Positions 2,603 through 49,094 of a stretch of DNA of 64,000 bases are shown piece by piece. Numbering within the stretch: position 1 is the first letter of the stretch; each line of letters opens with the position of its first letter. The DNA lies in the IMG/VR virus record IMGVR_UViG_3300023199_000204, positions 1-64,000 of that record. The stretch is one strand, 5' to 3'. Under the pieces are notes generated by a model that saw only the letters and a list, made by a program, of their open reading frames with translations, did no database searches and was not told the DNA's origin. A program made the position numbers and the translations under genes.

Positions 2603-3403
2603 ATGTCTAATATTAGCAAGTATATGGAAAATATAAAACTAGATGTTATTAAACTATATACTAAAGATAATTTAAGTTATAATGCTATAGCTAAAAAATT
2701 TAATGTAAGCCAACCCAGTATTAAAAAATATTTAATTAATTGGGGAGTTAAACAAAAACCAGTCTATGAACAAATGAGTTATGTATTACACGATAGACAA
2801 AAAGATGATAGGTGTTTTCCAAAAAATATTCTTAATTTATTAGAAGGTGGTTTGCTTGGTGATGGTGGAGTTTATAATACCAAACTTCAATCTTATTATC
2901 AGCACGGATGTATTAACAAAGATTATATAGATTTTTTAAAAACATATTTTAATAACAATGAAATTATAGCAAACATTTGCTCTATTGCCCCAAAAGGCAA
3001 AAGTGTTAAAAGATTTTATTGTCTAACAACCAGAAGTAGTTTATTTTTAAGGAATATTAGGAATAAGTGGTATAAAGGCAGTATTAAGATAGTTCCAGAA
3101 GATTTTGAATTATGTCCTTTATCATTAAAGCATTGGTGGATAGGTGATGGATATTTAAACCCTGATTGGGGATGGGCTACTATTGCTACGCAAAGTTTTA
3201 CAGAAAAAGAGAATATGTTTTTAAAAAATAAATTAAATAATATTACTGAACATTATATAACCTTACGTCCAAGTGGTAAAGCAGCTCCAGGTAAATTTCA
3301 TCTATATTTATCAAGAAAAGCAATAAATGATCTAATTAATTATATGGGAAGTTGTCCTGTAAAATCGTTTAAATACAAATGGAAGGTTAAAAATGGTATT
3401 TGA
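2603..3403 (+). CDS. LAGLIDADG homing endonuclease (N-terminal HTH plus two LAGLIDADG motifs)
   Basis: GGLLGDGG and HWWIGDGY motifs, ATQSFT..E; AT-rich. Confidence 0.85.
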   Translation: MSNISKYMENIKLDVIKLYTKDNLSYNAIAKKFNVSQPSIKKYLINWGVKQKPVYEQMSYVLHDRQKDDRCFPKNILNLLEGGLLGDGGVYNTKLQSYYQHGCINKDYIDFLKTYFNNNEIIANICSIAPKGKSVKRFYCLTTRSSLFLRNIRNKWYKGSIKIVPEDFELCPLSLKHWWIGDGYLNPDWGWATIATQSFTEKENMFLKNKLNNITEHYITLRPSGKAAPGKFHLYLSRKAINDLINYMGSCPVKSFKYKWKVKNGI

Positions 3404-4088
3404 AATAATACAATCAGGAAATGCTTTACCATTTTTCTATAAACTGGATCCAACTGCTACATTTGAATCAGGGCAAATTGGTCAGCTTAAGCTTATAGGA
3501 AATGATATAGTTGTAGGATTATCTGACGGAACAGCTCCTTTGGGTATTATTGATGATGTAAGAACTACAGCTTTTTCGCAACCTGTTGCCGATGAAGTTG
3601 TAATTATTCAGGGAATAGATATTACTACAGACGGCTATAATACTTACAACGGAAGAGATTCCATAGGTCCACTAGATAATTCCCCAGTTATTGGGTCAAG
3701 CTTTACTTCAGATTATCCAGATGTATCTTTAATCACAACCAATGGAAATTTAATTTTACCAGCCGGGGCAGAGCTTAATTATGATGCCGATGGAGATGGA
3801 ATAAAAGAATCTGTAAGAATGACAGTTAGTTATGTTTATCATGTGGCTGATTTACCTGGTGGAGATACTACATTAGGAAGTGGAAAAGTCACTATTTGGT
3901 TTCAAAGAGGAATTTTTGCTACGGATCAGTATGATACTACTGCCAAATATCCTTTAAACGCAGTATTATTTGTTAATTCTGAAGGAAAGCTTACCACAAG
4001 TCAAACCACTCCTGAACATCCAGGAGTTGCGATGGTTACAGGTCCTCCGGGAGCTACGATAAACACTTTAGAGTTCCTATGGCTATAA
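3393..4088 (+). CDS. Capsid decoration/cement-like protein 1
   Basis: Beta-rich; shares QSGN, SGKVT.W..G and GKLT with the gene directly upstream of the major capsid gene. Confidence 0.55.
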   Translation: MVFEIIQSGNALPFFYKLDPTATFESGQIGQLKLIGNDIVVGLSDGTAPLGIIDDVRTTAFSQPVADEVVIIQGIDITTDGYNTYNGRDSIGPLDNSPVIGSSFTSDYPDVSLITTNGNLILPAGAELNYDADGDGIKESVRMTVSYVYHVADLPGGDTTLGSGKVTIWFQRGIFATDQYDTTAKYPLNAVLFVNSEGKLTTSQTTPEHPGVAMVTGPPGATINTLEFLWL

Positions 4089-5152: not shown

Positions 5153-5167
5153 GCCTAGGAGGAATAA

Positions 5168-5569
5168 ATGTCTTTTTCAAAAGAAGATAAAGCTGCTTGG
5201 AACAACAGCGAAATAATGCAGGAGTTTGAAAAAATTGCTGCGGAAATGGAAATTTTTAATGGACCTCCTGAGGAGGCATATCTTCCAATCAAAAATGCTG
5301 ATGACGATTGGGAAGATGAAATTAATGATGATGTTGAAAACAAAAATATTGAAGCGGAAAATAAGAAAGAGGATTTTTTAAAAATAGCAGAATTTGAAAA
5401 AAACTTGCTAGAAAAAAAGAAAACAGTAGATGATAAATTAATCAATGATTTGCGAACCTTGTCCGAAAAATTAATTTCAAAAAGAAAAATTGAGGCAGCA
5501 TATAAAGTGGAGAGGGCCATTTTAGATATTGAGGCACATCTTCAGACGGAGGAAAATAATGACATTTAA
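5168..5569 (+). CDS. Putative internal head protein
   Basis: AGGAGG RBS; N-terminal W..SEIMQEFEKIAAE shared with the 5559 and 9590 proteins; degenerate helical module at the C-terminus. Confidence 0.55.
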   Translation: MSFSKEDKAAWNNSEIMQEFEKIAAEMEIFNGPPEEAYLPIKNADDDWEDEINDDVENKNIEAENKKEDFLKIAEFEKNLLEKKKTVDDKLINDLRTLSEKLISKRKIEAAYKVERAILDIEAHLQTEENNDI

Positions 5570-8500
5570 TTATAGTGGAACAAGTGTTATGGAAGAATTG
5601 GAGAAAATTGCTATAGAAAAAAAATGGCTAACTGTAGAGGCAGGTCCAGACGCAGGTTTAATTAAATCAATTCAGCAGCAAATGAATGAGTTGGTTGGAA
5701 GATTACATAAACCAATGCCTCCTCAATATAATGTATTTCCTCTTGATGTTGATGGTGTTTTTGGACCAAAATCGACAAAAGGTATTAGAGGAATTATGCT
5801 TGTTGCCCAAGATGCTGTTAAAAACACTCCTAATAGACATATGCCTCAACACAGAGAGTTAATTACTGGTATAAGTGAAATGAGCAGGGGGACTCCAGAC
5901 GCTCTTTTAACTGGTCTTAAATATTTAAATAAATATTTTTATGAGAATTGGGGAGAGAAAATTAAACAAAAGGAGCCTCAAATTAAACTTCCTGAATGGG
6001 CAAAAAATAAGCCAGCACCAGTGGGAGATGGAACTGATGAGCCAGACTGGGAGGCACCTGCCGATGATGAAAAAAAATCTTGTTTACATAGCGAAGAGTG
6101 TCCACCAGGTCAGCGTTGTTATCAAGGATATTGCGAAGAATATATGGAAGAAAGCCCAATTAAAGGGGCGTCAAATAAAACTAACTTGGAGAAAATTGCT
6201 ATGAATCCTCGCGAATGGTTTAACAGCTTAGACTACAACACTCAGAGCAGAGTGAGAAGAAAAGTATATGAATTAATGAAAGGAAGAGGTTTTGATCAGG
6301 AAGGGGCTCTTGGAATGGTAATGAGACAAATGAATCCTCCTGAACCAAAACAAAAGCCTCCTCTTAAACAAGAGTGGCCTGATACGCCTGATTTTAATCC
6401 AGATGATTTTTTACGAGAAGTGGAAAGGGGTGTTCAGGAACAATATCCTTCTTTTAAAATGACCTCTTCTGTTATAAACAGTTTGGTTTCTCTTGCCAAT
6501 GATTTAGATGATATGGGAGCAAAAGAGGCTTCTTTTTCTGTTGATAATCAAATTAAGATATATAAAGAAGCTCTTGATAAGCTTTATGATGTAACTGGAG
6601 AAACTGGAGAGCAACTTATTGAAAAAGCACATCCCGGCGGAGGTCCAACAATTGCTCCTTCAAAAGAAGAGGGTGGCAAAGTTGAGACAGTTGTTGAGGA
6701 GCAGAAAAAATCAATTGACAAGGCGACCAAAAAGCCAACTGGAAAATATGCTCAAACAGTGTCAAAACTAATTGCTTTGGCAAATAAGCTTGAAGATGAA
6801 GGGAATGTTAAAGCCGCATTACAAGTGGATGAGTCAATACGGGAAATGAGGGCCTTGCTCCCTTTTTCAAATAGGAGTTCAGTAATTGAGGCAGCTGGCT
6901 CCGAGGACAAAAAAGCCTCGGTTGTTAAGAAAGGTTTTAGTCTTACGGAGACATTGGAAACAGATATAAATGATTATGCTATAGTTCTTGGAATAATGTA
7001 TAAACTGAATCAAGAGCAAAGACCATTGTATTCAGGAGCTTATAAAAACCTTAAAAACCTTTTGTTGAAATATTTATCTAAAGCTAAATATTATGAAAAT
7101 TATTCAAAACAAAGTAATGCCAAAAACTATCACCAATTAATTATATACTATAATAATTTAGAACGGTTTACTAAAAAAATTGTTGATAATTCTGGGACTA
7201 TGTCAGATATGGGAATGTTTTCTATAAGATTAGCATCTCATTTAAGAAGTATTCAAGAAGGGTTAGTTTATCTTGGGAAAGCTATGGATTCATTTGATTA
7301 TACTACTTCACCAAAAAAAGCTCTTGAGCCTCTTTCTGGAAATTCAAGACAAAGGGCAATAAAATCTTATTTAAAAGATCTTAAAACACTAGAAAATTTA
7401 ATACAAACTCAAGATCCAGTAAAAGTTGGTAAAATTTTAAATGGCGGTCTCAAGGCTATAGACCAGCTAGAGAAATGGATTGAAAAAAGAAGATATAATC
7501 TTACAGTTACTGATGGAAACGATAGTTATATTGGTGATAAACTTGAATTGCCTCATATTACACAGTTAAGAAATTATATTTCTAAGTTACAGAAGGGTTT
7601 AGGAAAAACTTCTGGAATAAAGTTTTATAAATTTGTCAAAACTGCTCTTGATGGCGCACCACCAGTTGGCATTGGAGGCGGATCTGCCACTCCACGAAGA
7701 AGAACAAGAAGTGTTGTTAATAGGAAGCCAAAAGACCAACAAGTGGTTAAATTACAGAGGGCTCTTAAAAAAGCAAATTTTGATACTGGCAAAATAGATG
7801 GATATTGGGGAAAAAACACTGCTGCGGCTTTTAACGCAATGCTGGCAAAACTTGGGCAATCAAGGGGCAGAGCTTTCAAACAGTTTAGTGGTGATAAAAA
7901 ACCCAATCCAAAGGTTTTAAGATTTGGAATATATGCTGCCAATTTATATCAAAGAAAAGATATTCCAAAAGGAAGATTTTTTGTTCTTACTGATACTGGA
8001 GAAATAGATTTGCCATTATCTGCATTAAATAGTCCTTCTAGTTTTATTGGGGCTCTGGAACTAAATTCCGTTATAAGGAAAGATCTTTCGGCAGAGGAAA
8101 AGGTTAAAGCAGCCGAAAAAGTTTTAATATTTACTGCTAAGAAATTAAATCCTCCAGATAAAGCTCCATATGTTTTGGGCAGAGTTGAAGACTTAATGGA
8201 TCTAAGTTATATTGATAAAGCTAAAAATAATTTAAGGCTTTTGAATAAAGCATATGTTATGTTAAAACCGTTTGTCTTAAAAGTAAAAAACAAAGAAAAG
8301 GTTGATGAAAAATCTTTAAAACAGAATAAGTTAAAACCTTCTGTTAAAAGCCCTTCTGCTAAAAGAAGTGTTAAACAAAAATTAGAAAAAGCTATGTTAA
8401 AAATTATGCCTGAGCCTGGGCAACTAACAAGCCTTGAATCTTTTGAACGACTTGCTCAAGTAAATAATATGACTGCTAGAGAATATTATCCACTATTAAA

Positions 8501-8648
8501 AAGCAGAATTGTTGGTGTTATGAGATTTATGAAAAACAATAAATCACAGCTTGTTGCTGAGCTTGGTTCTGATGGATTTTTAGATAAGTGGTGGAAATTA
8601 GAAAGAGTAAGCCGTGATCTTGATAGGTTAAAAGCTGCTATCAGATAA
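5559..8648 (+). CDS. Large putative internal/ejection protein with two peptidoglycan-binding-like domains
   Basis: Start moved to ATG 5559 (GGAGG RBS). PG_binding_1-like segments IQQQMN..VDGVFGPKS and LQRAL..IDGYWGKNT; two LA..LD..G modules; a small CxxxxECPPGQRCxxGxC motif. Confidence 0.6.
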   Translation: MTFNYSGTSVMEELEKIAIEKKWLTVEAGPDAGLIKSIQQQMNELVGRLHKPMPPQYNVFPLDVDGVFGPKSTKGIRGIMLVAQDAVKNTPNRHMPQHRELITGISEMSRGTPDALLTGLKYLNKYFYENWGEKIKQKEPQIKLPEWAKNKPAPVGDGTDEPDWEAPADDEKKSCLHSEECPPGQRCYQGYCEEYMEESPIKGASNKTNLEKIAMNPREWFNSLDYNTQSRVRRKVYELMKGRGFDQEGALGMVMRQMNPPEPKQKPPLKQEWPDTPDFNPDDFLREVERGVQEQYPSFKMTSSVINSLVSLANDLDDMGAKEASFSVDNQIKIYKEALDKLYDVTGETGEQLIEKAHPGGGPTIAPSKEEGGKVETVVEEQKKSIDKATKKPTGKYAQTVSKLIALANKLEDEGNVKAALQVDESIREMRALLPFSNRSSVIEAAGSEDKKASVVKKGFSLTETLETDINDYAIVLGIMYKLNQEQRPLYSGAYKNLKNLLLKYLSKAKYYENYSKQSNAKNYHQLIIYYNNLERFTKKIVDNSGTMSDMGMFSIRLASHLRSIQEGLVYLGKAMDSFDYTTSPKKALEPLSGNSRQRAIKSYLKDLKTLENLIQTQDPVKVGKILNGGLKAIDQLEKWIEKRRYNLTVTDGNDSYIGDKLELPHITQLRNYISKLQKGLGKTSGIKFYKFVKTALDGAPPVGIGGGSATPRRRTRSVVNRKPKDQQVVKLQRALKKANFDTGKIDGYWGKNTAAAFNAMLAKLGQSRGRAFKQFSGDKKPNPKVLRFGIYAANLYQRKDIPKGRFFVLTDTGEIDLPLSALNSPSSFIGALELNSVIRKDLSAEEKVKAAEKVLIFTAKKLNPPDKAPYVLGRVEDLMDLSYIDKAKNNLRLLNKAYVMLKPFVLKVKNKEKVDEKSLKQNKLKPSVKSPSAKRSVKQKLEKAMLKIMPEPGQLTSLESFERLAQVNNMTAREYYPLLKSRIVGVMRFMKNNKSQLVAELGSDGFLDKWWKLERVSRDLDRLKAAIR

Positions 8649-10985: not shown

Positions 10986-11061
10986 TTACGAAATCTCGAA
11001 TAATAACGGGATATAACGATCAAAGATACAATATAAATATATTTCTTTGGAGGAAATAAAA

Positions 11062-11703
11062 ATGGCATTATACATCTACCAATCGGGCAATGAGCCCCTA
11101 GGTCAATTTGACGTTCTTGACTCATACCAGAGCAGCATTCTTGGTGGTGAGATTGGAACAGTATATGAGGCATCCAGAACTGTAACTGCTTCAGAAAAAG
11201 CCGCATACGACGTTCTTGACGGCTACACTAACACTACTGACGTAACTCGTGCTGGTGTTGCTAATAGAGTTAATACTAATGGACAGCGTCCACTATGGCT
11301 TCTTGATGAAGGAACTACAGGATATGGAACTCTTTTTGGTCAGGTAATTGGAACTCCTACAGGTCTTAGCACCTCTGGAACCAACCTTGGCCCACACACT
11401 TCTGCCGCAAGTGGTAAAGTCACCTGCTGGAATAAACCAGGTCTTTATGCAGTATCACTAGATGCTGTAAATACTGCTTCTGACGGAATTGTTCTTTCAA
11501 ACGTTTCTATGGATCCAGGTTTAGCATTACAACCGCTTAACAACGGTAAGCTAACCCCAACTGGTTCTTCAGGTGCTGTAAACGTAACTGTTGGACACTT
11601 CGTAGAGTTTGAAACTTCACCATTCTTGGTGACAACTCCACCTTCACTAGTTGGAGCCGCTGAAGCAGCAGAGAGAGCTGTATTTAACTTTTTAGCACTG
11701 TAA
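11062..11703 (+). CDS. Capsid decoration/cement-like protein 2
   Basis: Start moved to ATG 11062 (GGAGG RBS). Directly upstream of the major capsid gene; high-expression-type codon usage; paralogous to 3393. Confidence 0.6.
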   Translation: MALYIYQSGNEPLGQFDVLDSYQSSILGGEIGTVYEASRTVTASEKAAYDVLDGYTNTTDVTRAGVANRVNTNGQRPLWLLDEGTTGYGTLFGQVIGTPTGLSTSGTNLGPHTSAASGKVTCWNKPGLYAVSLDAVNTASDGIVLSNVSMDPGLALQPLNNGKLTPTGSSGAVNVTVGHFVEFETSPFLVTTPPSLVGAAEAAERAVFNFLAL

Positions 11704-12848: not shown

Positions 12849-12884
12849 GATAAAGGGGCTTTGTTCCCCTTTATCTTTTTTTTT
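12849..12884 (+). terminator. Rho-independent terminator after the major capsid gene
   Basis: GATAAAGGGG / CCCCTTTATC stem followed by T9. Confidence 0.9.
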
Positions 12885-12930
12885 GTCGATAAGAGCGACC
12901 CACACCAAATATAACTCGTTAGGAGGTTGG

Positions 12931-39035: not shown

Positions 39036-42000
39036 ATGGGAGATAGCACATATCCAAGTCAAATAGACAACGACCAAAATCTACCGAGGGTAGATGACAA
39101 TATAAGTGAAATTGGTGGAGAGGCTATTAACTCTGTCAGGAGTGCTGTATTTGCTATCGAAGAAGCTTTGGGTATAGAGCCGCAAGGGACTGCGACAGAC
39201 TTAGCAACAAGGCTCGATGCTTCTTTAAATTCAGATGGAACATTAAAAGCTTCAGCCCTTTCTACTGTCGGATTAGTAACTCTTCCTATTACAAATAGTC
39301 AGGTCGCAACGAACGCAGGCATAGTTGAATCAAAGCTTGATTTAAACTATAATACCACATATTTGAAAACAAGGATAGAAGAAGTAAATACGTTTGCTCT
39401 TTCTATTAATGAAGCGTTACTTAGTGATATTGCTAATCTTAATCAGCACGTTGGTCATCCTGGGGTTTTTGGCAGGCATCAAACCTCAGACATTGATGGG
39501 TATATTTCCCCTTATGCTTCATTGAATCTTCAAGGAATTGTTAATGACCTATACACAAGAATTACTAATCATATTGGTGATTTAATAGATGCTCACGACG
39601 CTAGTGCTATATCTGTTGTTCAGGCAAATCTACAATCAATATCTGCCGATGATGTTCAAGAGGCAATAGAAGCCCTAGATTTAGCTCAACTTGTAGAGGT
39701 GATTAAACATAGGGACCAAAACCATAGCAATGGAATTAATAATGACTCAAATGTAAATCTTATTGGTGAAAATCATTCTACTACTTCAGTATCATCTGCG
39801 GCACTAAATTCGTTTAATAGTGGAACAAGAACTATTCAATTTTCTTCTGTCCCTGCTGGAATAAGCTCTGTTAAAAGATATGATAGAATTGATGTGACTG
39901 TTGGTGGAAATACTTATAGAAGAAATATTAAATCAGTAAATACCGCAACTGCCGCCATAGAGGTGTTTAGAGAACTTCCTGTCGGTGGCGCTGGAACTGC
40001 TGTAATTTATCAAAGTTCTGAGGAAACATCAGCAGACTCGCAACTTAAATTAGCATTAAGGCAGCCAAATGTTTCATCAACAGGCGGCTCTGTTATTCAG
40101 TTAATTCACCCATCTTCACCATATATATTGAGCAGTGGATGTGATCCAAGGTTATTGAGTTCAGCAGCCAGTGATATTAAAATTAGATGGGCTACGGGCG
40201 AAACTGCTGATATTGATGTAAATACAGCAATTCAAACTTATCCAGTAGCAAGTTCTTTGCAAAGCACCTGGACTGTTGAAAACCTAGTGATTGCCCTCAA
40301 TGAAACATTTAGATCTGAAACACTAGGATATCACTATCCTCTAATCGCATTTGTTCATAATGGAGAGATTGGAATAGCTTTTGATGAAGCTGATGGATAC
40401 ATTGAAGCTGTCGCCCCAACTTCAAATAGTGCTTGGTCGGCACTAGGATTTAGCGGCACCGAAAAAGTTGACGCATTAGAAAATAGAAACTTTTATATTG
40501 ATGGATATGAATTTTCTGGAATAAGAAAAATAATAGATGCTAATGGAGAAACCACTGGTTCTAGCAATGTAAGCAGCATTGATGTTGATTTGGTTTCAGC
40601 GGGAATTGTTGCTAGTGGATTAGTGAGAGTATCAAACAGTGTTGCTGATGATGGGACATATGTTTATGATGCTATTACTACGTCTACATTAACTATAAAC
40701 GAACACCCTATTTTTACTTCGGATTCTAGCGTTGATATTAAAATTTATTCCGATTATTTTAGTGTTCCCACAACTCCTGTAAATAGAACTCTGTTTGAGC
40801 TTTTTATTGACGGGTATGAATTAGGTGAGGCTGAGTTAAGAGGAATTCCCAGAGCAGAATATATTAATGCTGGAGGAACTCCAGACAATCCAGAAATATT
40901 TTTTGATATAATCTCTGTTTCAAGAAACTTCTCTGCTTCCGAAAAAAGAATTAGATTTGAGGATAATTCTGGTGTAAAAACAGCCCAGCTTGGTTCAAGA
41001 GGCTCCGGATTATTATTGTCAACTTCTGGAGAAACTGTTACTTTACCGACAACAACTGCTGAAGGATATAAATTTAAACTTTATGATCTTAATGGTATTG
41101 ATTACGTGGAATTAATGGTAGCATACAGTAGCTATGCGACCGTCACTAACGACAATGCCATTGATGTCGAGATATATGATAGAATTAGCGAAGATAAGTT
41201 TTTACTTTTGGGAACTGTACTTCACGACAAAACTTCTTTTAAACATCTATTTGATAGAAGACTTTTAGGTAGTGTCGGCAGAAAAGATGTAAGGACTGAT
41301 TATACAAGAGATTATGTTTCCTATCCTCGTTCTTTAATGAGAGGGAATGGAGTTATATATGGATGTGTAGTAGAAAATCCGACAGGAGATTTATATATTT
41401 CTGGCGGGCAAGTAGTTGTTGATGGTCAGATATTTAATATAGAGAGAACTGTATTCTTTGTTCCAGAAGACGCATTGGTTTCAACATATAATGTTTTTAT
41501 TGACTCTGACGGAACCCCTAGATTGTTAAAGGATGACCAACACGTTAGTGGTCAACTAACAACCCCCTCTGTTGCTGAAATTATAGCAAGCAATGATAAG
41601 ACAATTATTGCTCAAGTTGAAGTTAATGCCGGAAATTCTGTAACAGCTATTAATGATTTTAGAAGATTTGTTAATAATCTTGATAATAAAGTTGATTTAT
41701 TTGTTGAAGAAAACAGCATAACTCACGGTTCTTTTGCTTCTATAGACGCAGCTTTAAATTATGCTGATATAGCAGTCGGTGATAATCAACCATTGTCTAG
41801 GGTGTTGAGAATTAAAGGAGATATAAGTATTACATCTAATGTTATTTTATCTAGTAATTTAACTATTGAAGGAGATTGTGGAGGCTCACAAACTACTCAA
41901 ACAGGATCAAGGCTTTCCTTTAATGGCTCAGGATATTTAACTCTTGGAAATAATAATACTTTAAGAAATTTAAATCTATATTCTGAAACCACTAATTTCA

Positions 42001-43577
42001 GTGGCTTAGTTAGAGCAACAGGTAAAGATGATATTTTAATAGAAAATTGTAGTTTTCAATACTCAACTTATGATCCCTCAAATACTGGTATATCTTTATT
42101 AACATCTGGAACAAATATTAATGTTAATAAATGCTCCTTTGCAAATACTGGTTCTTCTATATCTTGCGTTGGTGCTAATCAAGTAATATTTAAAAATAAT
42201 GTATTTGATGATATAGCATTAGCGGTATTATCAGTCGATTCATATGATATGATTATATCAAATAATGTTGTTGATACAAGCAATGTTTACTCAGTGTCTC
42301 CGTATCTAATAAAGCTCCAAAACTGTGGAAGAATTAATATAAGTGATAATATTTTATCAACAGATGCTACGTCAGCAGAAACGGGAGCAATGATACGTCT
42401 TCAAACAACGAGTAACCGAGTTAATATTGAAAACAATATTTTAATGAATACAGATGTTAATTCACAAGGGTTTTCAAAAGGAATTTGGATGGAGGGGTCT
42501 GTTATAGGAGACCACTTTTTTAATATTGTTTCAAATAATCAACTACACTTCTTTTTTGGAACAGCTCCATCTATAGCAATTGATATAGATGCAGGAGATA
42601 ACATATCGGTGTTAAATAATAAAGTATTTAATGCTGCAAGGGCACTTGATATGTTTGACTGTCAATTCTCTACTGTCTCAGGGAATACCCTAAATACTTG
42701 GTTTTCTTCAGAAACAACTGTTAAAATTGATGCCACTACCCCTCTGTTATCTGGAGCATTTAATAATTTAATTAATAATCAAATTGCTTCGTCTAATGTA
42801 GCTCCGAATGCCGAGTTGGTCGAGATAACAGATATTGGGTTTGGAAACACTATATCTGGAAATCTATTTTGTCACTTATTTGCAGTTATTTCTTCAGCAG
42901 CTCTATTATCATGTGCTGCCGATGTGACTCAAATTACTAATAATATTTTTAATGGAGGGATATATAGTACAGCTTCTCCTTTGGTGTATTCAGGTAGTAA
43001 CGGAATGGTAGCTTATAATAATTTGAATCAAATTACTGCAGTTCCAGCAGCAGGGCACACAGATGTTGATGGCTACAGCGCTGATACTATGAATTTAGGA
43101 ACGGAATATAATACATTTATACCGTTAAATCGAGCTAAAAGAAACCATGCCGCATCAGACTGGGAATTTACAGTTGGAGTTGTAACAAATAAAGTATTTC
43201 TTATTGCAACTACTTCCAGCGGAACTCCCAATAATCATTTGTTAATAGAATTTACTCAAGCCGATCTTATGCCATCTAAAACAAATAACTCAATCGAATT
43301 AGTTAAAGTTGAAGTTAGATGTGCGGCAACATTATCGGCAGGTTTAGATTTAGAATTAGTAAAATCAGAATTTAGCTTTGCCGGCAGCGGCGGGTCAACT
43401 ATTGTTTCTGTAACTAATCCAGTTGGCGGCTACGGCTACGGCCCAGAAACAGTTACCTTGACTCCAGCAAGCAGAAAGTTTTTAGGTCCAGATGAATCAT
43501 TCGCTGTTAGGGCAATCTCTCAAGTTGCATCAGTAAATAATATATATGGAGTTATGGTTTATTGGAAATTAAATTAA
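39036..43577 (+). CDS. Large tailspike/fibre protein with C-terminal beta-helix
   Basis: Same N-terminal anchor as 36100; HDASAIS..VQEAI fibre motif; many I.NN beta-helix rungs. Confidence 0.7.
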   Translation: MGDSTYPSQIDNDQNLPRVDDNISEIGGEAINSVRSAVFAIEEALGIEPQGTATDLATRLDASLNSDGTLKASALSTVGLVTLPITNSQVATNAGIVESKLDLNYNTTYLKTRIEEVNTFALSINEALLSDIANLNQHVGHPGVFGRHQTSDIDGYISPYASLNLQGIVNDLYTRITNHIGDLIDAHDASAISVVQANLQSISADDVQEAIEALDLAQLVEVIKHRDQNHSNGINNDSNVNLIGENHSTTSVSSAALNSFNSGTRTIQFSSVPAGISSVKRYDRIDVTVGGNTYRRNIKSVNTATAAIEVFRELPVGGAGTAVIYQSSEETSADSQLKLALRQPNVSSTGGSVIQLIHPSSPYILSSGCDPRLLSSAASDIKIRWATGETADIDVNTAIQTYPVASSLQSTWTVENLVIALNETFRSETLGYHYPLIAFVHNGEIGIAFDEADGYIEAVAPTSNSAWSALGFSGTEKVDALENRNFYIDGYEFSGIRKIIDANGETTGSSNVSSIDVDLVSAGIVASGLVRVSNSVADDGTYVYDAITTSTLTINEHPIFTSDSSVDIKIYSDYFSVPTTPVNRTLFELFIDGYELGEAELRGIPRAEYINAGGTPDNPEIFFDIISVSRNFSASEKRIRFEDNSGVKTAQLGSRGSGLLLSTSGETVTLPTTTAEGYKFKLYDLNGIDYVELMVAYSSYATVTNDNAIDVEIYDRISEDKFLLLGTVLHDKTSFKHLFDRRLLGSVGRKDVRTDYTRDYVSYPRSLMRGNGVIYGCVVENPTGDLYISGGQVVVDGQIFNIERTVFFVPEDALVSTYNVFIDSDGTPRLLKDDQHVSGQLTTPSVAEIIASNDKTIIAQVEVNAGNSVTAINDFRRFVNNLDNKVDLFVEENSITHGSFASIDAALNYADIAVGDNQPLSRVLRIKGDISITSNVILSSNLTIEGDCGGSQTTQTGSRLSFNGSGYLTLGNNNTLRNLNLYSETTNFSGLVRATGKDDILIENCSFQYSTYDPSNTGISLLTSGTNINVNKCSFANTGSSISCVGANQVIFKNNVFDDIALAVLSVDSYDMIISNNVVDTSNVYSVSPYLIKLQNCGRINISDNILSTDATSAETGAMIRLQTTSNRVNIENNILMNTDVNSQGFSKGIWMEGSVIGDHFFNIVSNNQLHFFFGTAPSIAIDIDAGDNISVLNNKVFNAARALDMFDCQFSTVSGNTLNTWFSSETTVKIDATTPLLSGAFNNLINNQIASSNVAPNAELVEITDIGFGNTISGNLFCHLFAVISSAALLSCAADVTQITNNIFNGGIYSTASPLVYSGSNGMVAYNNLNQITAVPAAGHTDVDGYSADTMNLGTEYNTFIPLNRAKRNHAASDWEFTVGVVTNKVFLIATTSSGTPNNHLLIEFTQADLMPSKTNNSIELVKVEVRCAATLSAGLDLELVKSEFSFAGSGGSTIVSVTNPVGGYGYGPETVTLTPASRKFLGPDESFAVRAISQVASVNNIYGVMVYWKLN

Positions 43578-44097: not shown

Positions 44098-45090
44098 GTG
44101 ATAGAATGTAATAGATGCCGTAGAAATAGAAAACACAAAGCAAAAGGAATGTGTCTTTCTTGTTATTCTGGATCTTTATATAAAAAAATAATTTGCTCAA
44201 ATTGTAAAAATAAAAGAAGACAGTTTAGAAAAAGTTCTTCATTGTGCTCTAAATGTTTTAAACACTTATCTAAATTTAAATGTAAAAATTGTAATAGCAA
44301 AATACATTTTGAAAATGGATTTTGTAAATTTTGTTACATACCTCCAGAGAAAACTTGTAATAGTTGCTATAAAGTCGGTATTCTTAAATCTAATTTATGC
44401 TCTAAATGTTATAATAAAAAATATTATTCTAAAAATATTGGAAAATGCGAAATATGTAAAAAAGAAAAAAACATATTTAACCATAGTGGTAAATATATAT
44501 GTTCAAAATGTAATCATAGGAATATAAGAACTATATCTATTTGTAAAATATGTTCAAAAGAGAAGGTTATATATAAAGACGACAAGTGTAAATATTGTTG
44601 CGTGAAGGTTGGGAAATGTAAAAAATGTAATATAATAAGAAAATTATTTTATGATAATAAAACAGTATGTAGATTATGTTATTATCCTCCTAAAAGAGAA
44701 TGTTATTTTTGTAATAAATATGGAATAATATCAAAAATAAAAGATGGCAAATATATGTGTAATAAATGCTATAATTCTCAACCAGAAAGAATAGCTATTT
44801 TACAAAATAACAGAGCAAGTAGGGGAAATATTTCAGGAAGTGAGTGGTTATATATAATGAATTCTACAAATTGGAAATGTTTTTATTGTGAGCAAAAGTT
44901 GAACAAGAATAATAGAACTGTTGATCATATTATTCCTATAATAAAAGGCGGTTCTAATAGTATAGATAACTTAGTTCCTTCTTGTAATATATGTAATTCA
45001 AGCAAGAACGCCCAAAATGTATTTAAATGGCTTAAAATAAAAAATATTGAATTGACGGAAGAAAAATTAAAAACCCTTGGAGTTAAGTAA
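44098..45090 (+). CDS. Cys-rich HNH endonuclease
   Basis: Many CxxC pairs; CFYC..TVDHIIP..GG....NLVPSC..CN.SK. Confidence 0.85.
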   Translation: MIECNRCRRNRKHKAKGMCLSCYSGSLYKKIICSNCKNKRRQFRKSSSLCSKCFKHLSKFKCKNCNSKIHFENGFCKFCYIPPEKTCNSCYKVGILKSNLCSKCYNKKYYSKNIGKCEICKKEKNIFNHSGKYICSKCNHRNIRTISICKICSKEKVIYKDDKCKYCCVKVGKCKKCNIIRKLFYDNKTVCRLCYYPPKRECYFCNKYGIISKIKDGKYMCNKCYNSQPERIAILQNNRASRGNISGSEWLYIMNSTNWKCFYCEQKLNKNNRTVDHIIPIIKGGSNSIDNLVPSCNICNSSKNAQNVFKWLKIKNIELTEEKLKTLGVK

Positions 45091-45872
45091 TGAGTACATC
45101 GCACAGAGTATATAGTGATCTTTTTCAAGAAGCTAATTTTGTAAATCAGACGGCTGTATCTCAAGGGAAAAATTTACTTATAGATGTTATTAGAGAATCG
45201 TTTAAAAAAGATACATTTTATCGCTATACTCACGACGCCTTTGGTTTCCCTTTAACACCGGATTTAACAGCTCTTCCTCCAGATATTCAAGAGGAAAGAA
45301 CAACAAGAATATATATAGGAGATGTATATCGTTATGATAAAAGATTTAATCCTTCAATAACAGTTAGACATTCTTCGGGAAAATATAAGCCAATATCTAT
45401 TAATCAAAATCATACCACTAAATATAGATTGGATTTGGTAATTGATGGATATGGAAATAGATCATATATTAGGGTTCCGACACATAGGGTCATTACTGGA
45501 GCTTGGGAACAAACATTTGAAGTTAAAATAACTTCAGAAAGCACACAGGACCGCGAAGAATTGACGGATATTGTGACAGGGTATTTACAAGGTGTTGTTC
45601 GTCAAGAACTGTATGAGGCTGGACTTTTTGTTAGAGGAGTGAGTATGAGTTCTGAAACTGAAGAAGATTGGGCTAATGATAAGTTATATATACAGAGTAG
45701 TAGTCTGGAAACATATTCAGAATGGCGTAGGCACCTTCCAATAAATAGTGTAATTGAAACACTTAATTTTTGTTTTAACTATGGTATTTTAGGAAGTGGC
45801 AACTTTGCTTTAGACAGTATTATGGTTCATACTGAAGATAATACAATCAGTTATGAAGTTCCAGTCACTTAA
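45090..45872 (+). CDS. Tail completion/terminator-like protein
   Basis: Position before the sheath; P.ITV..GAW...FEV.I.SES..DREEL.D.V pattern. Confidence 0.5.
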   Translation: MSTSHRVYSDLFQEANFVNQTAVSQGKNLLIDVIRESFKKDTFYRYTHDAFGFPLTPDLTALPPDIQEERTTRIYIGDVYRYDKRFNPSITVRHSSGKYKPISINQNHTTKYRLDLVIDGYGNRSYIRVPTHRVITGAWEQTFEVKITSESTQDREELTDIVTGYLQGVVRQELYEAGLFVRGVSMSSETEEDWANDKLYIQSSSLETYSEWRRHLPINSVIETLNFCFNYGILGSGNFALDSIMVHTEDNTISYEVPVT

Positions 45873-46393: not shown

Positions 46394-46437
46394 TTACTTA
46401 TTTATCTGTCAATCTAAAATGGTTGAAGTTTTATTAT

Positions 46438-46458
46438 CTATCAATAAAACATTATATC
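46438..46458 (+). promoter_or_regulatory. Candidate late promoter CTATCAAT-N7-TATATC
   Basis: Recurrent motif upstream of the sheath gene. Confidence 0.6.
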
Positions 46459-46550
46459 AATGATGCTAAAAATTTTCAATAAAGTCTTGAAATCATATGT
46501 TTTAAGCTATTGTGGGCATCGTCAAATATATATATTTTGGAGGATTTCAA

Positions 46551-49094
46551 ATGCCTAATATTCCTGGAGTACAAGGTCCATTAATACCATCTGTAGTGAC
46601 GAGGGTAAGGGTAAGATCAAGGGCTCTATCAATTCCTGGGGGATTGAGAGTTTTATGTTTAGTTGGCGAAGGTCGTCGCGAGGAGGTTCTTGTAGATTCT
46701 GCTCAAGGGGGCGGTGCCGATGGATTTGTGCCAGATTTTTCTCAATTAGCCACTGATGGTTATGGAAGATTTTTCCGTCTGGCAAACACCAGCATAGTTT
46801 CAAACAGAACATCTCTTTTATTAAACGGATCAGAATTAAGACTTTTAGAAGAAGCTCTTGATGGAAACAGCTTCTCATCAAGTTATGACGCAAGAATTGA
46901 TATTTCTACAGGTCAAATAGAGCTTCAAAGTGCTTCTATTGTTGATCAGGGCGGAATATTATATTCAGAAAGCTCAGGAAACACCGGTGATGGTTATTTA
47001 TCAGCAATAAATCTTACAGATTCTAATGCTCCTGCGGAAACTTGGACAATTAGGTGTACTAGTGTTTTAAAAGACAGTTATGGTGCTCCTATAAGAGAGC
47101 AAGCTACATTTATAGCCTCAGGTTCAGTTAGCGGACAATTAGTAGACTCATATGGTCAGCCATTTACTTGGAAAAGTGATGGAGCCGCCGTAGATAATGG
47201 AATTTTGTCTTTTGCTATATATAATCCTTCTCCTAGTCAGCCTCACGATGTAGGCGACAGATACTCTATTCAGGTTTCTAGTAAGGTGTTACAGGAAAGA
47301 GATACTTTAGAAGCCAGATATATTGCTGAAGCAGATTTGCTTGATCCTCAAACATTTACAGAGCCAGAAAAACTTTATATTAAGCACGGACAGCCCGATT
47401 TGGAAAATACATTATCTTTTGCCGCGCAATTGGCTTTTGAAAATGGAGCAACAAGTGTTCTGGCTGTTCAGGCGAAACCAGCATTGCCAAGAAGAACTAG
47501 TGAAATTGTTCTTCCTGCTCAAAATTCACTAACAGGCGAAACTGGTGCTGATGGTGGTTCTGATCCAGATGATTTAATTTTTCCAATCACTGCTCCAGGA
47601 AAACCAGGAGCTGATTCAGAAGTTCATTTCTTTATTATAAATGCTGATGGGTCAGAGGACCAAATATTCCCTAATAAAGTTTCATTTTATGATCCTGATA
47701 TTACGACCGCATTTTCCACTTATGAAGATACTGGCGTAAGTGCTGATTTACTAACTGAATTTATGGCTCCAGGCTCAAGTGGAACTCCATATAGCTATAC
47801 TGTTGTAAGTGATGATAAAATTGAAGATACTGGAATTGATGGGTATATTTCACCAATTGGTGTTGGCTCAACAGCATTTTTTACAGCCTCTTCTGCCTCA
47901 TTTACAAGTGAAGCAGTAACTGATGGAAAATATATTGATGTCGTAAATACTGGAACTGCTAATCTTGGCAGATGGGAAATTACAGAGGTTGTAAGTGCCA
48001 CAACTGTAAGAATTTCAAGAGATTCTGGATTTTTTGCTACCGAAACAGATTTAAAATGGCAGCTATTACTTCCTGGAGAATCATCTTATAGAGTTTTATT
48101 TACAACTGATTTAGCTTTAGCTTCGGGCAAAGGTTTAAGAGTTAGTTATATAGATGAGAAAGATGAAGACTTTTTTGATGCTAACTGGGCAGTGGCTCTT
48201 GATACTTTAGAGACTCAAGATTTACAGATTCTTGGTCTATATCCTAGTCAAACATTTTCAGCAATTCAGCAGGCTGGTCGTGTCCACGTGGAGAGAATGT
48301 CTTCAACATTCTATAAGAGAGAGCGTGTGCTCTTCACAGGTGCTTTGGATGGTTTAACGACTGATAATGTGCTCGGCGTATCCAACGCGGCTGTAGAGAA
48401 TATAGGAATTCTTGAGGGCATTCAGGGTGATTCTGCCGAAGAGATATTAGATGGAAATATCGAAGATTTGACAGATTACAGTGTTGTAAATAGCTTTGGA
48501 GACAGCTTTAGAGTTGCGTATTTCTATCCAGATCAAGCTATTAGGGTTGTTAATGGAACAGCAACCACAATTCCAGGGTATTGGATTTCAGCCGCTGCGG
48601 CAGGAAGAATGTCAGGAGAGCCTAATATTGCTCAGCCTCTAACAAATAAGGTATTATCTGGAATAACAATTCTAAACAGTCGTCAATATAAAGAAACCGT
48701 TCTTGCTTCTCTTGGAGATGATGGAATTATTGTATGTCAGCCAGTTACAGGCGGCGTGAGAGTTATTCACGGAATTACAACTTCTCAAAGTGGAAACCCA
48801 GAAGATGAAGAACTATCAATCGTGTTCATTCGTGATCATATCGCGAGAACTATGAGAGATACATTTAGAGAGTTTATCGGGCAACCAGAAGATCCTACAC
48901 TAATTCCTTCTTTAACTGCCAAAGCAATTTCGCTACTTAATGCTTTTGTCTCTCAAAACTTGATTACTGCTTATAGAAACCTATCTGTATCCAGAGATGA
49001 TGTAGAGCCAAGACAATACAATATCGTGGTTGAAGTCCAACCTAACTATCCAGTTAACTGGATATTCTGTGATGTGAGCGTAGGACTCTTTTAA
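46551..49094 (+). CDS. Contractile tail sheath protein
   Basis: Start at ATG 46551 (GGAGG). H...MS....ER, AAA.AG......PLTNK, GITT....ELS...IRD and PNYPVNWI...V sheath C-terminal motifs. Confidence 0.9.
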   Translation: MPNIPGVQGPLIPSVVTRVRVRSRALSIPGGLRVLCLVGEGRREEVLVDSAQGGGADGFVPDFSQLATDGYGRFFRLANTSIVSNRTSLLLNGSELRLLEEALDGNSFSSSYDARIDISTGQIELQSASIVDQGGILYSESSGNTGDGYLSAINLTDSNAPAETWTIRCTSVLKDSYGAPIREQATFIASGSVSGQLVDSYGQPFTWKSDGAAVDNGILSFAIYNPSPSQPHDVGDRYSIQVSSKVLQERDTLEARYIAEADLLDPQTFTEPEKLYIKHGQPDLENTLSFAAQLAFENGATSVLAVQAKPALPRRTSEIVLPAQNSLTGETGADGGSDPDDLIFPITAPGKPGADSEVHFFIINADGSEDQIFPNKVSFYDPDITTAFSTYEDTGVSADLLTEFMAPGSSGTPYSYTVVSDDKIEDTGIDGYISPIGVGSTAFFTASSASFTSEAVTDGKYIDVVNTGTANLGRWEITEVVSATTVRISRDSGFFATETDLKWQLLLPGESSYRVLFTTDLALASGKGLRVSYIDEKDEDFFDANWAVALDTLETQDLQILGLYPSQTFSAIQQAGRVHVERMSSTFYKRERVLFTGALDGLTTDNVLGVSNAAVENIGILEGIQGDSAEEILDGNIEDLTDYSVVNSFGDSFRVAYFYPDQAIRVVNGTATTIPGYWISAAAAGRMSGEPNIAQPLTNKVLSGITILNSRQYKETVLASLGDDGIIVCQPVTGGVRVIHGITTSQSGNPEDEELSIVFIRDHIARTMRDTFREFIGQPEDPTLIPSLTAKAISLLNAFVSQNLITAYRNLSVSRDDVEPRQYNIVVEVQPNYPVNWIFCDVSVGLF

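What the first reader, a model, noticed from the sequence alone, without database searches (positions are those of the whole stretch)
3393..49094. D-G-Y tripeptide tags surface-exposed virion proteins only: a candidate virion modification signal
Seen: 23 DGY tripeptides in seven structural proteins totalling about 4,600 aa (decoration 3393 x1, decoration 11062 x1, neck 32229 x8, spike 36100 x4, spike 39036 x5, tail completion x1, sheath x3), plus several DSY/DAY variants. A rough compositional expectation (D~7%, G~8%, Y~4%) is about one. I found none in the major capsid protein, both tubes, tape measure, 56008, hub or spike (about 4,000 aa). Codons vary freely (GAT/GAC, all four Gly codons, TAT/TAC), so the pattern is at protein level, not a DNA repeat. 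In the internal duplication of the 36100 protein, LADGYAL aligns with FADSYVL, so D-[G/S]-Y look interchangeable. IDGYISP occurs in both the sheath and the 39036 spike. Inference: unrelated outer proteins carry a common short recognition sequence for a phage-encoded modifier (Tyr O-glycosylation or sulfation, or attachment of a decoration), perhaps to cloak or stabilise the virion. I know of no described system with this sequon.
Basis: partly seen in the sequence, partly recalled or inferred. Interest (0 to 1): 0.9.

Follow-up and report, generated by a model that had tools for sequence, protein, structure and literature searches.

The report
DGY motif on jumbo-phage outer proteins
The tripeptide Asp-Gly-Tyr is about eight times more frequent than expected in this uncultured giant phage, almost entirely in its outer virion proteins; its relatives keep regaining the motif at new positions, and a large sugar-transferase gene cluster follows the most motif-rich fibre genes, so it may be a glycosylation tag, though that is unproven.

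Summary
The counts are right. The window's 59 + strand ORFs hold 26 DGY against 3.2 expected, which ranks first of 8,000 tripeptides; 23 sit in the seven named proteins. The signal is at protein level: the other five orderings of D, G and Y occur 1-5 times each, the DNA pattern never occurs on the minus strand, and codons follow genome usage.

"Only surface proteins" is overstated. Three more DGY lie in two LAGLIDADG homing endonucleases and a peptidoglycan-binding domain, and a lectin-domain virion protein has none.

The window is the first 64 kb of a 316-kb contig related to Bacillus phage G. Relatives at 24-70% identity show the same excess in the same protein families, with some sites fixed and many gained anew. 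Counting each alignment column once gives 51 DGY columns against 8.4 expected, while NGY, EGY and DGF sit at baseline. (DGY)n arrays with variable spacing occupy predicted disordered loops.

Walking the contig found a ~15-kb glycosylation cluster directly after the DGY-rich fibre genes, in the same order in at least 11 related contigs. Phage G shows neither the DGY excess nor hits to the two transferases tested.

Best reading (~0.4): a motif read by phage-encoded glycosylation enzymes. No modification is shown.

The parts
32229..34241 (+). 670-aa virion protein with 8 DGY (aa 29, 44, 341, 346, 350, 353, 370, 373). It has tandem FN3/Ig-like domains, then a DGY-rich linker, then a C-terminal Cys4 and HxH-motif domain.
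   Evidence: Counts are. AF2 gave mean pLDDT 64.5, with aa 140-330 confident; Foldseek matches fibronectin-III arrays. D373-G374-Y375 are at least 90% conserved in 23 orthologues at 28-62% identity.
33249..33353 (+). Cluster of six DGY within 35 aa (aa 341-375), spaced 3-5 aa within two sub-clusters 17 aa apart. It is an expansion of one ancestral DGY site.
   Evidence: The alignment with orthologues shows the expansion. The cluster lies in the 113-aa segment 329-441, which has pLDDT below 50 and almost no secondary structure. Neighbouring copies use different synonymous codons.
36100..38700 (+). 866-aa fibre-like protein with 4 DGY (aa 10, 126, 289, 621), plus DSY200, DAY61 and DAY256. Its N-terminal 60 aa are paralogous to those of 39036.
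   Evidence: No Pfam, PHROG or PDB sequence match was found.
39036..43577 (+). 1,513-aa fibre or spike protein with 5 DGY (aa 154, 453, 489, 592, 1345).
   Evidence: Eight of nine orthologues hold 3-6 DGY each against 0.3-0.5 expected; a truncated 846-aa one has none. Sites 154 and 489 are kept in 8 of 9. L024 (24% identity) has 6 DGY, none shared with the window.
45090..45872 (+).
   Evidence: DGYG is invariant in all 16 sequences of the alignment (the window's plus 15 orthologues), down to 33% identity.
46512..49094 (+). 860-aa tail sheath with 3 DGY (aa 82, 160, 443) and DSYG at aa 188 and 212. All lie in the non-core N-terminal 550 aa.
   Evidence: The PHROG tail-sheath match covers aa 556-857 only. 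GDGYL160 is kept in 20 of 21 orthologues; sites 82 and 443 turn over. The AF2 model is poor overall (pLDDT 52.8). DGY443 lies in the confident strand 436-448, and DSYGA188 is a hairpin loop.
11047..11703 (+).
   Evidence: 65 homologues average 0.66 DGY against 0.06 expected, in 5 distinct alignment columns. There is no detectable similarity to phage G gp26, so the decoration role is inferred from position only.
3393..4088 (+).
   Evidence: 33 homologues average 0.36 DGY against 0.05 expected. No family match was found.
2603..3403 (+). LAGLIDADG homing endonuclease whose DGY (aa 182) is part of the endonuclease motif.
   Evidence: Pfam LAGLIDADG_2 at 6e-17 and PHROG 11023.
12883..13899 (+). Second LAGLIDADG homing endonuclease, with DGY at aa 206 in the same motif. 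Not part of the phenomenon.
   Evidence: Pfam LAGLIDADG_2 at 1.5e-24. It is a paralogue of 2603.
5529..8648 (+). 1,039-aa protein with a PG_binding_1 domain. Its DGY (aa 757, DGYWG) falls inside that domain match; that it corresponds to the domain's DGxxG consensus is my own knowledge.
   Evidence: Pfam PF01471 over aa 736-767, and endolysin PHROGs.
27462..28164 (+). Class-I SAM methyltransferase (Methyltransf_24) split into two ORFs (27462-27776 and 27730-28164) by a frameshift at a T6 run near 27765. It is the only transferase-like gene inside the window and a weak candidate modifier.
   Evidence: Pfam hit on the second piece at 4.6e-8, covering profile positions 36-105. The DNA was read. 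The pieces were searched apart and were not joined.
31738..32217 (+). 159-aa DUF4157/eCIS_core zincin-like protein (HESTH at aa 81) directly upstream of 32229.
   Evidence: Pfam PF13699 at 4.5e-4, below the curated cut-off. Homologues appear in 18 of the DGYDGY-scan loci, alongside 32229 homologues in 25.

Best explanation
DGY (more loosely D-[G>A]-Y) is a short linear motif kept by selection on the exposed parts of the outer virion proteins. These include fibres, a tandem-FN3 protein, the non-core part of the sheath, a tail protein and two head-associated proteins. The motif is found across a clade of uncultured jumbo phages related to Bacillus phage G.

Its context-independence suggests it is read by a trans-acting factor. 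The most likely reader is the phage's own cytoplasmic glycosylation machinery, encoded in a ~15-kb cluster directly downstream of the most DGY-rich fibre genes.

Proposed mechanism:
1. The nucleotidyltransferase, the dehydratase/epimerase and the DegT aminotransferase make an activated amino-deoxy sugar.
2. One transferase puts the first sugar on the Tyr hydroxyl of DGY, presented in a tight Asp-Gly turn or a disordered loop.
3. The other transferases extend the chain.
4. The methyltransferase caps it.
The result would be a glycan coat on fibres, neck, sheath and head.

What is shown: the motif's excess, its specificity, its turnover, its turn or loop setting, and the presence and position of the gene cluster. 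What is inferred: that the cluster acts on virion proteins, that DGY is what it recognises, and that Tyr is the acceptor.
For: Statistics:
- 26 DGY against 3.2 expected, rank 1 of 8,000 tripeptides.
- The other five orderings of D, G and Y occur 1-5 times each.
- The maximum over 5,000 shuffles was 11.
- The signal is at protein level only.

Clade-wide behaviour:
- Most relatives' loci show a 7-12-fold excess, in the same protein families.
- Counting each alignment column once gives 51 DGY columns against 8.4 expected (p = 2e-23).
- By the same count NGY is 0.6x, EGY 0.7x, DGF 1.4x and the permutations about 1x.
- Eight control families (MCP, tubes, 53913, 56008, 56838 and others) have 0 columns against 3.0 expected.

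Sequon-like behaviour:
- New sites arise by substitution in homologous context, while the number per protein stays at 3-6.
- 239 non-redundant sites share no conserved flanks.
- At DGY columns Tyr is replaced by N, T, S, V and others; F appears in only 5 of 25 columns.
- (DGY)n arrays have 3-8 aa spacing, vary in synonymous codons and sit in predicted disordered loops.
- DGY44 of 32229 is a two-residue hairpin turn.

The class is viral. Of 120 IMG/VR hits to a DGYDGY-coding pattern, 84 are in frame and many have large local excesses. Of 120 hits in cellular genomes, 44 are in frame and all but one lack any further excess.

Candidate enzymes:
- The cluster holds a double GT4, two GT2, a GT47-like gene, Nucleotid_trans, a SAM methyltransferase, DegT, an epimerase/dehydratase, NTP_transferase and HAD.
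- It lies at contig 84.8-100.4 kb, directly after fibres holding 7, 6, 2 and 2 DGY.
- Its own 17 ORFs hold none.
- The order fibre, fibre, GT4 is kept in at least 11 contigs.
- Phage G shows no DGY excess in the two regions examined and no hit to the double GT4 or the 513-aa GT2.
Against: - There is no direct evidence that any residue is modified.
- The conserved fibre-GT order reflects one ancestral arrangement in one clade, not independent co-occurrences. Phage G is a single outgroup.
- Phage glycosyltransferase clusters can instead modify DNA or the host envelope.
- Tyr-linked glycans are known to me only from S-layers, where they are added outside the membrane (PMC2943079). No cytoplasmic Tyr sequon is described.
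- Several DGY are invariant over deep divergence (sheath 160; 45090 aa 119), which also fits a structural role.
- DGY443 of the sheath is modelled inside a strand.
- The lectin-domain protein 19372 has no DGY.
- DGY shows roughly 2-fold excess over composition in the unrelated phage regions examined (T4, phiKZ and a Lysinibacillus phage, pooled 17 against 8.2).
- Both structure models are of low to moderate confidence, and solvent exposure could not be computed.
Confidence: 0.4

Rival explanations
1. DGY is an intrinsic adhesive or ligand-binding patch. An Asp carboxylate next to a Tyr ring, displayed many times over the virion, would give weak multivalent binding to host polysaccharide, biofilm matrix or a metal ion. 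The neighbouring glycosylation cluster would serve another purpose, such as modifying DNA or the host envelope.
For: The motif is concentrated in fibre or adhesin-type proteins that also carry Laminin_G_3 lectin, FN3, PKD, kelch or YadA_head modules. The demand for D and Y rather than N, E or F fits a chemical role for both side chains. Arrays in loops suggest multivalency.
Against: A bare tripeptide in unrelated settings (turns, strands, disordered arrays) with no conserved flanks does not make a defined binding pocket. Trp and Phe, which I know to be common in sugar-binding sites, are not enriched after D-G. The window's own lectin-domain protein 19372 lacks the motif. Invariant sites in the sheath and in 45090 are hard to explain by host binding.
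Confidence: 0.2
2. DGY is a clade-specific structural idiom: an Asp-Gly tight turn followed by Tyr at the start of the next strand. It would be favoured in the beta-rich, fast-evolving outer proteins and partly inherited from common ancestors, with no reader at all.
For: DGY44 of 32229 and DSYGA188 of the sheath are modelled as hairpin turns. In a kelch propeller (L234) DGY sits at the D-G hairpin in five blades. Some sites are invariant. I and F are mildly preferred at -1. DGY shows roughly 2-fold excess in the unrelated phage regions examined.
Against: NGY is at 0.6x, although to my knowledge Asn-Gly is the commoner tight-turn pair; DGF is only 1.4x. Tyr is mostly replaced by polar residues, not Phe. 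Variably spaced (DGY)n arrays in predicted disordered segments are not hairpins. T4's long fibres and phage G's tail module show no excess. New sites keep appearing while the count per protein is held.
Confidence: 0.15
3. DGY is a docking or cross-linking motif between virion parts. It could be read by a phage chaperone, by an accessory fibre that sticks to head, neck, sheath and fibres, or be used for Tyr-Tyr or Asp-Lys covalent links that harden the particle.
For: The same context-independence and array behaviour applies as for a modification site. The motif sits on parts that could touch each other, namely the sheath surface, the neck-region protein and the fibres. The sheath's DSYGAP matches the core of the resilin repeat, where Tyr cross-links form (own knowledge).
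Against: No candidate reader protein was found. Lys is depleted, not enriched, around DGY, which argues against Asp-Lys links. Oxidative Tyr coupling needs an oxidase, and none was seen in the 100 kb examined.
Confidence: 0.12
4. The excess is a compositional or sampling artefact, a DNA-level repeat, or comes from a few paralogous domains.
For: Six of the 26 sites lie in one 35-aa stretch. Three lie in known domain motifs.
Against: 22 well-separated sites still give p = 6e-12. DGY ranks first of 8,000 tripeptides under two null models. The DNA pattern is absent from the minus strand and almost absent from the other frames. BLAST finds no paralogy among the DGY proteins apart from 56 N-terminal aa of 36100 and 39036. 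Independent relatives repeat the result.
Confidence: 0.01

Closest known systems
Virion glycosylation in mycobacteriophages (Freeman et al. 2023, Cell Host Microbe 31:1216; cited in PMC11256854)
   Same: Phage-encoded glycosyltransferases are proposed or shown to put glycans on virion proteins and form a glycan shield (PMC11256854).
   Different: In those phages the reported targets are the major capsid proteins (PMC11256854); by my recollection the tail tube is also a target, methyltransferase genes accompany the transferases, and the sites lie in C-terminal Ser/Thr-rich stretches rather than at a defined tripeptide. Here the MCP and tubes have no DGY and no Ser/Thr-rich tails. The candidate targets are fibres, sheath surface and accessory proteins, and the candidate acceptor is Tyr. 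Nothing is shown biochemically here.
Sequon-directed bacterial protein glycosylation (own knowledge): PglB D/E-X-N-X-S/T; Bacteroidota D-(S/T)-(A/I/L/V/M/T); cytoplasmic HMW1C on N-X-S/T of an adhesin; SdgA/SdgB on Ser-Asp repeats
   Same: A 3-5-residue motif marks many unrelated surface proteins. An Asp lies two residues before, or next to, the acceptor. Adhesin repeats are modified in the cytoplasm. Motif number rather than exact position is conserved.
   Different: The acceptor there is Asn, Ser or Thr, never Tyr. No D-G-Y sequon was found in the literature. Several of those systems act outside the cytoplasm.
Tyrosine O-glycosylation of Firmicutes S-layer proteins (Paenibacillus alvei SpaA, Thermoanaerobacter; review PMC2943079)
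   Same: Glycans are O-linked to Tyr on a displayed surface protein. The hosts are Bacillota, as is the host of the closest cultured relative, phage G.
   Different: Transfer there is thought to be co-secretional, by an O-oligosaccharyltransferase (PMC2943079). Only a few Tyr per protein are used, and the review gives no consensus motif. No such transferase was seen here.
Bacillus phage G (Donellivirus gee), the closest cultured phage
   Same: The major capsid protein is 53% identical. Both are jumbo myoviruses, and the sheath and 45090 are distantly related to phage G genes.
   Different: Its head region (1-50 kb) and tail region (90-140 kb) hold 2 and 3 DGY against 1.6 and 2.7 expected. There is no tblastn match to the double GT4 or the 513-aa GT2.

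Membership tests
Phage virion glycosylation system (mycobacteriophage type) | Phage-encoded glycosyltransferase genes, with or without a methyltransferase, associated with the structural genes | tested here: met
   A double GT4, two GT2, a GT47-like gene, Nucleotid_trans and a SAM methyltransferase lie at contig 84.8-97 kb, co-oriented with and directly after the fibre genes. This region is outside the 64-kb window.
Phage virion glycosylation system (mycobacteriophage type) | Glycan covalently attached to virion proteins (mass shift, glycostain) | not testable with these tools
   The phage is uncultured and no proteomic data are available here.
Phage virion glycosylation system (mycobacteriophage type) | Targets are the major capsid protein and tail tube, via Ser/Thr-rich C-terminal stretches (own recollection of Freeman 2023) | tested here: not met
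   The MCP and both tubes have 0 DGY in the window and in 67, 12 and 17 orthologues. Their C-termini are not Ser/Thr-rich.
Sequon-directed general protein glycosylation | A short motif over-represented in, and under selection on, exposed proteins, independent of flanking sequence | tested here: met
Sequon-directed general protein glycosylation | Acceptor residue Asn, Ser or Thr within the motif | tested here: not met
   The motif is D-G-Y. DSY is at 1.1x and DTY at 0.5x; DGS and DGT are only 1.5x.
Sequon-directed general protein glycosylation | A transferase shown to recognise the motif | not testable with these tools
   Only candidate enzymes were identified.
Tyr O-glycosylation (S-layer type) | Membrane O-oligosaccharyltransferase with lipid-linked glycan assembly | tested here: inconclusive
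   No such family appears among the Pfam marks of the genes at contig 52-100 kb or in the window proteins scanned. About 216 kb of the contig were not seen.
Tight beta-hairpin turn (Asp-Gly, type I'-like) as a purely structural motif | D-G occupy the two loop positions between two antiparallel strands | tested here: inconclusive
   This holds for DGY44 of 32229 and for the DSYGA188 loop of the sheath. It fails for DGY443 (inside a strand) and for the arrays in the unstructured segment 329-441. Both models are of low to moderate confidence.
Tight beta-hairpin turn (Asp-Gly, type I'-like) as a purely structural motif | Equivalent turn formers (Asn-Gly) and equivalent aromatics (Phe) should be enriched alike | tested here: not met
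   NGY is 0.6x and DGF 1.4x, against DGY at 6.1x.
Calcium-binding loops (DxDxDG, EF-hand-like, RTX) | Several acidic or Asn ligands at fixed spacing around the D-G | tested here: not met
   No conserved flanking positions appear in 239 non-redundant sites; D is at most about 2x at -3 and +9.
Collagen-like Gly-X-Y repeat | Gly at every third residue over a long run | tested here: not met
   Array spacing varies over 3, 4, 5, 7 and 8 aa, and most DGY are solitary.
LAGLIDADG_2 homing endonuclease / PG_binding_1 (the three extra DGY) | Pfam domain match covering the DGY | tested here: met
   PF03161 at 6e-17 and 1.5e-24; PF01471 at 2.8e-6 over aa 736-767.

The most novel reading that the evidence does not exclude
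D-G-Y is a tyrosine O-glycosylation sequon read in the cytoplasm by a phage-encoded transferase of the adjacent cluster. A whole clade of environmental jumbo phages would then coat fibres, neck, sheath and head with a self-made, methyl-capped glycan. This would be the first defined sequon for phage virion glycosylation and the first sequon-directed Tyr glycosylation.
Probability: 0.3. Interest if true: 0.88.

Novelty: new variant of a known kind. Interest (0 to 1): 0.74.

Why it matters
Glycosylated phage virions are known from only a few cases, and as far as I know none has a defined acceptor motif. If DGY proves to be one, three things follow:
- Virion glycosylation could be predicted from sequence in metagenomes.
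- A testable enzyme-substrate pair would be available: a ~15-kb cluster and short peptide arrays that can be expressed in laboratory strains.
- A Tyr-directed, sequon-based protein glycosylation system would be added to the known set, of possible use for glyco-engineering.

Even if the motif turns out to be an adhesive or docking element, it is a rare case of a three-residue motif whose selection is visible directly in sequence statistics. It is seen across hundreds of environmental phage contigs, and it marks which virion proteins or domains are exposed.

Tried and rejected
- **DNA-level repeat or strand-independent motif:** rejected. The pattern never occurs on the minus strand, and arrays differ at synonymous sites.
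- **Hidden paralogy among the DGY proteins:** rejected. All-against-all BLAST links only the first ~56 aa of 36100 and 39036, and flanks are not conserved.
- **General property of phage structural proteins or fibres:** rejected. Pooled controls from T4, phiKZ, a Lysinibacillus phage and phage G give about 1-2x, and T4's long-fibre region gives 1 against 1.9.
- **Cellular counterpart or host clue:** a scan of 596 Gb of genomes for a DGYDGY-coding pattern found no DGY-rich class. The one exception is a contig binned to a Clostridia MAG (L342), possibly phage DNA.
- **PDB sequence searches** with the sheath, 32229, 36100, 39036 and a 14-DGY fibre gave nothing useful.
- **Homologue search with the 14-DGY fibre** returned only unnamed proteins.
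- **Literature searches** for a DGY motif found nothing. The papers of Freeman 2023 and Zarschler 2010 are not held.
- **AF2 model of the sheath** was too poor (pLDDT 52.8) to place DGY82 and DGY160. No coordinates are returned, so solvent exposure could not be computed.
- **Modifier genes inside the window:** only a frameshift-split Methyltransf_24 and a borderline LPG_synthase_C-like ORF turned up.
- **Similarity of 11047 to phage G's decoration protein gp26:** none.
- **Calcium-loop and collagen-like readings:** rejected; see the membership rows.

Full report
**What the window is.** All long ORFs lie on the + strand of a 33% G+C sequence.
- It encodes a major capsid protein (11791-12822, PHROG 2522), a tail sheath (46512-49094) and two tube paralogues (50900, 52264). 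It also holds large unannotated virion proteins and at least eleven homing endonucleases inserted between structural genes.
- It is the first 64 kb of the 316-kb contig IMGVR_UViG_3300023199_000204.
- The closest cultured phage is Bacillus phage G, with the capsid protein 53% identical. Other virion proteins have no close GenBank relative.

**Checking the observation.**
There are none in 4,020 aa of capsid, tubes, 53913, 56008, 56838 and 61541 (Fisher p = 6e-7).
- Over all 59 ORFs there are 26 DGY. Composition predicts 3.2 and a first-order Markov model predicts 6.0. DGY is the most over-represented of all 8,000 tripeptides under both models.
- The five other orderings of D, G and Y occur 1-5 times each.
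- 5,000 within-protein shuffles never exceed 11, and 22 sites remain after merging neighbours.
- The coding pattern occurs 29 times on the + strand, 26 of them in frame, and never on the - strand. Codons follow genome usage.
Two are in LAGLIDADG endonucleases, where DGY belongs to the catalytic motif. One is in a PG_binding_1 domain. These are ordinary domain motifs, and they show that 'only surface proteins' is too strong.
- The lectin-domain protein 19372-21648 has no DGY.

**Relatives.** The sheath, 32229 and the capsid protein retrieved 107 IMG/VR loci.
- Most loci around the sheath show a 7-12-fold excess.
- The excess sits in the same orthologous families: 32229, 36100, 39036, sheath, 45090, 11047 and 3393, plus homologues of 28173. 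It is absent from the capsid, tubes, 53913, 56008 and 56838.
- Some sites are fixed. GDGYL160 of the sheath is kept in 20 of 21 orthologues, and DGYG119 of 45090 in all 16 aligned sequences.
- Many sites are lineage-specific and arise by substitution in otherwise alignable sequence.
- Eight of nine orthologues of 39036 hold 3-6 DGY each whatever their divergence. The 24%-identical one has six, none at the window's positions.
- Counting every alignment column once gives 51 DGY columns against 8.4 expected (p = 2e-23, rank 1). NGY, EGY, DGF and the permutations are at 0.5-1.4x, and DAY is at 2.6x.
- Eight control families have 0 columns against 3.0 expected.
- Unrelated controls are near baseline. 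T4 gives 10 against 2.7 and 1 against 1.9 (the latter region includes the long fibres). phiKZ gives 5 against 2.2, and a Lysinibacillus phage tail block gives 1 against 1.5.
- Phage G itself shows no excess: 2 against 1.6 in the head region and 3 against 2.7 in the tail region.
- The phenomenon therefore belongs to an uncultured clade, not to phages or fibres in general.

**Anatomy of the motif.**
- 239 non-redundant sites share no flanking consensus. There is a mild preference for I or F before and G, F or N after, and Lys is depleted.
- At shared columns Gly is replaced mostly by Ser or Ala. Tyr is replaced by Asn, Thr, Ser, Val and others, with Phe appearing in only 5 of 25 columns.
- Fibre proteins of relatives are very rich. 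One 522-aa protein has 14 DGY. Some carry YadA_head or Laminin_G_3 modules.
- A scan of IMG/VR for a DGYDGY-coding pattern gave at least 120 loci, 84 of them in frame. About fifty have strong local excess, for example 20 against 0.85.
- Those loci contain (DGY)n arrays with spacing of 3-8 aa. One kelch propeller has DGY at the D-G hairpin of five blades, plus a DGYDGYDGY loop.
- Array copies differ at synonymous sites.
- The same pattern in 596 Gb of cellular genomes was in frame in 44 of 120 hits, and all but one hit had no further DGY.
- In 32229 the six-DGY cluster is an expansion of one ancestral site.
- That cluster lies in a 113-aa segment that AlphaFold2 leaves almost unstructured (pLDDT below 50). 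DGY44 is the two-residue turn of a hairpin in an FN3-like domain.
- The sheath model is poor. It places DGY443 in a strand and DSYGA188 in a hairpin loop. All sheath sites lie outside the conserved sheath core.

**Search for a modifier.**
- Inside the window only two candidates appear. One is a Methyltransf_24 gene split by a frameshift at a T6 run (27462-28164; the pieces were searched apart). The other is a borderline LPG_synthase_C-like ORF at 15021-15773.
- Walking the contig by exact-protein look-ups showed that the structural block continues. The further proteins are of 672 aa (1 DGY), 1,083 aa (2), 2,278 aa with Laminin_G_3 (7), 937 aa (6), 451 aa (2) and 181 aa with a PKD domain (2).
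- After one endonuclease there follows a ~15-kb co-oriented glycosylation cluster. Its transferases are a double GT4 (753 aa), a GT2 (513 aa), Nucleotid_trans, a SAM methyltransferase, a second GT2 and a GT47-like gene.
- The cluster's sugar-synthesis genes are a DegT aminotransferase, an NAD epimerase/dehydratase, a sugar-phosphate nucleotidyltransferase and a HAD hydrolase.
- Its 17 ORFs (about 5,000 aa) contain no DGY.
- The order fibre, fibre, (PKD), GT4 recurs in at least 11 related contigs, down to 28-36% fibre identity. The fibres there hold 3-15 DGY each and the enzymes none.
- Phage G has no tblastn match to the double GT4 or the 513-aa GT2.

**Interpretation.** The data show a minimal motif that is chemically specific (Asp and Tyr, not Asn, Glu or Phe). 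It is independent of context, placed in turns and loops of exposed proteins, and multiplied in disordered arrays. Its number is maintained while its positions drift.
- That behaviour is typical of a short linear motif read by another macromolecule.
- The only candidate readers found are the transferases next to the most DGY-rich genes. I therefore rank glycosylation, probably on Tyr, first, at about 0.4.
- The link from cluster to motif is inferred. The synteny is one ancestral arrangement, phage G is one outgroup, and such clusters can serve other ends.
- The rivals are an intrinsic adhesive or ligand-binding patch (0.2), a clade-specific structural turn (0.15) and a docking or cross-linking element (0.12). 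A statistical artefact is excluded.

**Comparison with what is known.**
- Virion glycosylation by phage transferases is established in mycobacteriophages (Freeman 2023, cited in PMC11256854). It is not reported with a tripeptide sequon nor on these targets.
- Bacterial sequons use Asn, Ser or Thr.
- Tyr-linked glycans are known from Firmicutes S-layers, where they are added outside the cell (PMC2943079).
- No paper in the library mentions a DGY motif.
- I therefore file this as a new variant of a known kind, with function unproven.

Noticed in passing
window 2603-3403, 4079-5152, 12883-13899, 13853-14699, 15838-18351, 23090-24421, 29324-30439, 34251-35303, 44098-45090, 49114-50100, 50090-50896, 51498-52262: The structural module is riddled with homing-endonuclease genes (LAGLIDADG, HNH, PHROG 4645 'endonuclease', HNH_repeat).
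   Followed up: partly
window 27462-28164: A Methyltransf_24 SAM methyltransferase is split into two overlapping ORFs by a frameshift at a run of six T near 27765. This could be a sequencing error, a pseudogene or programmed slippage.
   Followed up: partly
window 15021-15773: A 250-aa ORF in the head module matches LPG_synthase_C (PF09924) at 27.6 bits against a cut-off of 27.5. To my knowledge that domain is the aminoacyl-tRNA-dependent transferase fold of MprF.
   Followed up: no
window 31738-32217: A DUF4157/eCIS_core zincin-like protein with an intact HExxH (HESTH) motif lies directly upstream of 32229. Homologues occur in 18 related loci.
   Followed up: partly
window 19081-19368, 19372-21648, 21648-22217: A ~94-aa module is present once, once (as the N-terminus of a 758-aa Laminin_G_3/CBM-like protein) and twice in three adjacent genes, at 40-52% identity.
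   Followed up: no
window 32229-34241, C-terminal third: The 32229 family carries a conserved four-Cys cluster and repeated HxH motifs near the C-terminus. By my own knowledge these recall the metal-binding HxH repeats of T4 fibre proteins.
   Followed up: no
window 45869-46360 (- strand): The only conserved minus-strand gene is a 163-aa Cys-rich (several CxxC) protein between 45090 and the sheath, 57% identical in relatives. Other relatives carry different minus-strand genes in that slot.
   Followed up: partly
L359:5370-20948 (same contig, 84.8-100.4 kb, outside the window): A ~15-kb glycosylation and nucleotide-sugar cluster holds five glycosyltransferase-family genes, Nucleotid_trans, a methyltransferase, DegT, an epimerase/dehydratase, a nucleotidyltransferase and HAD. 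It also has two DUF4379 zinc-ribbon genes.
   Followed up: yes
L342 (CALXAV010000004.1, 24-32 kb; MAG 'uncultured Clostridia bacterium'): Two adjacent proteins of 1,108 and 1,183 aa hold 6 DGY each (12 against 0.52 expected). This is the only DGY-rich locus among 120 cellular-genome hits. It may be a binned phage or prophage and a weak host hint.
   Followed up: partly
window 5529-8648 and 9590-10963: These two proteins share a ~95-aa segment at 44% identity. 5529 also carries a peptidoglycan-binding domain, so it may be a virion-associated lysin.
   Followed up: no
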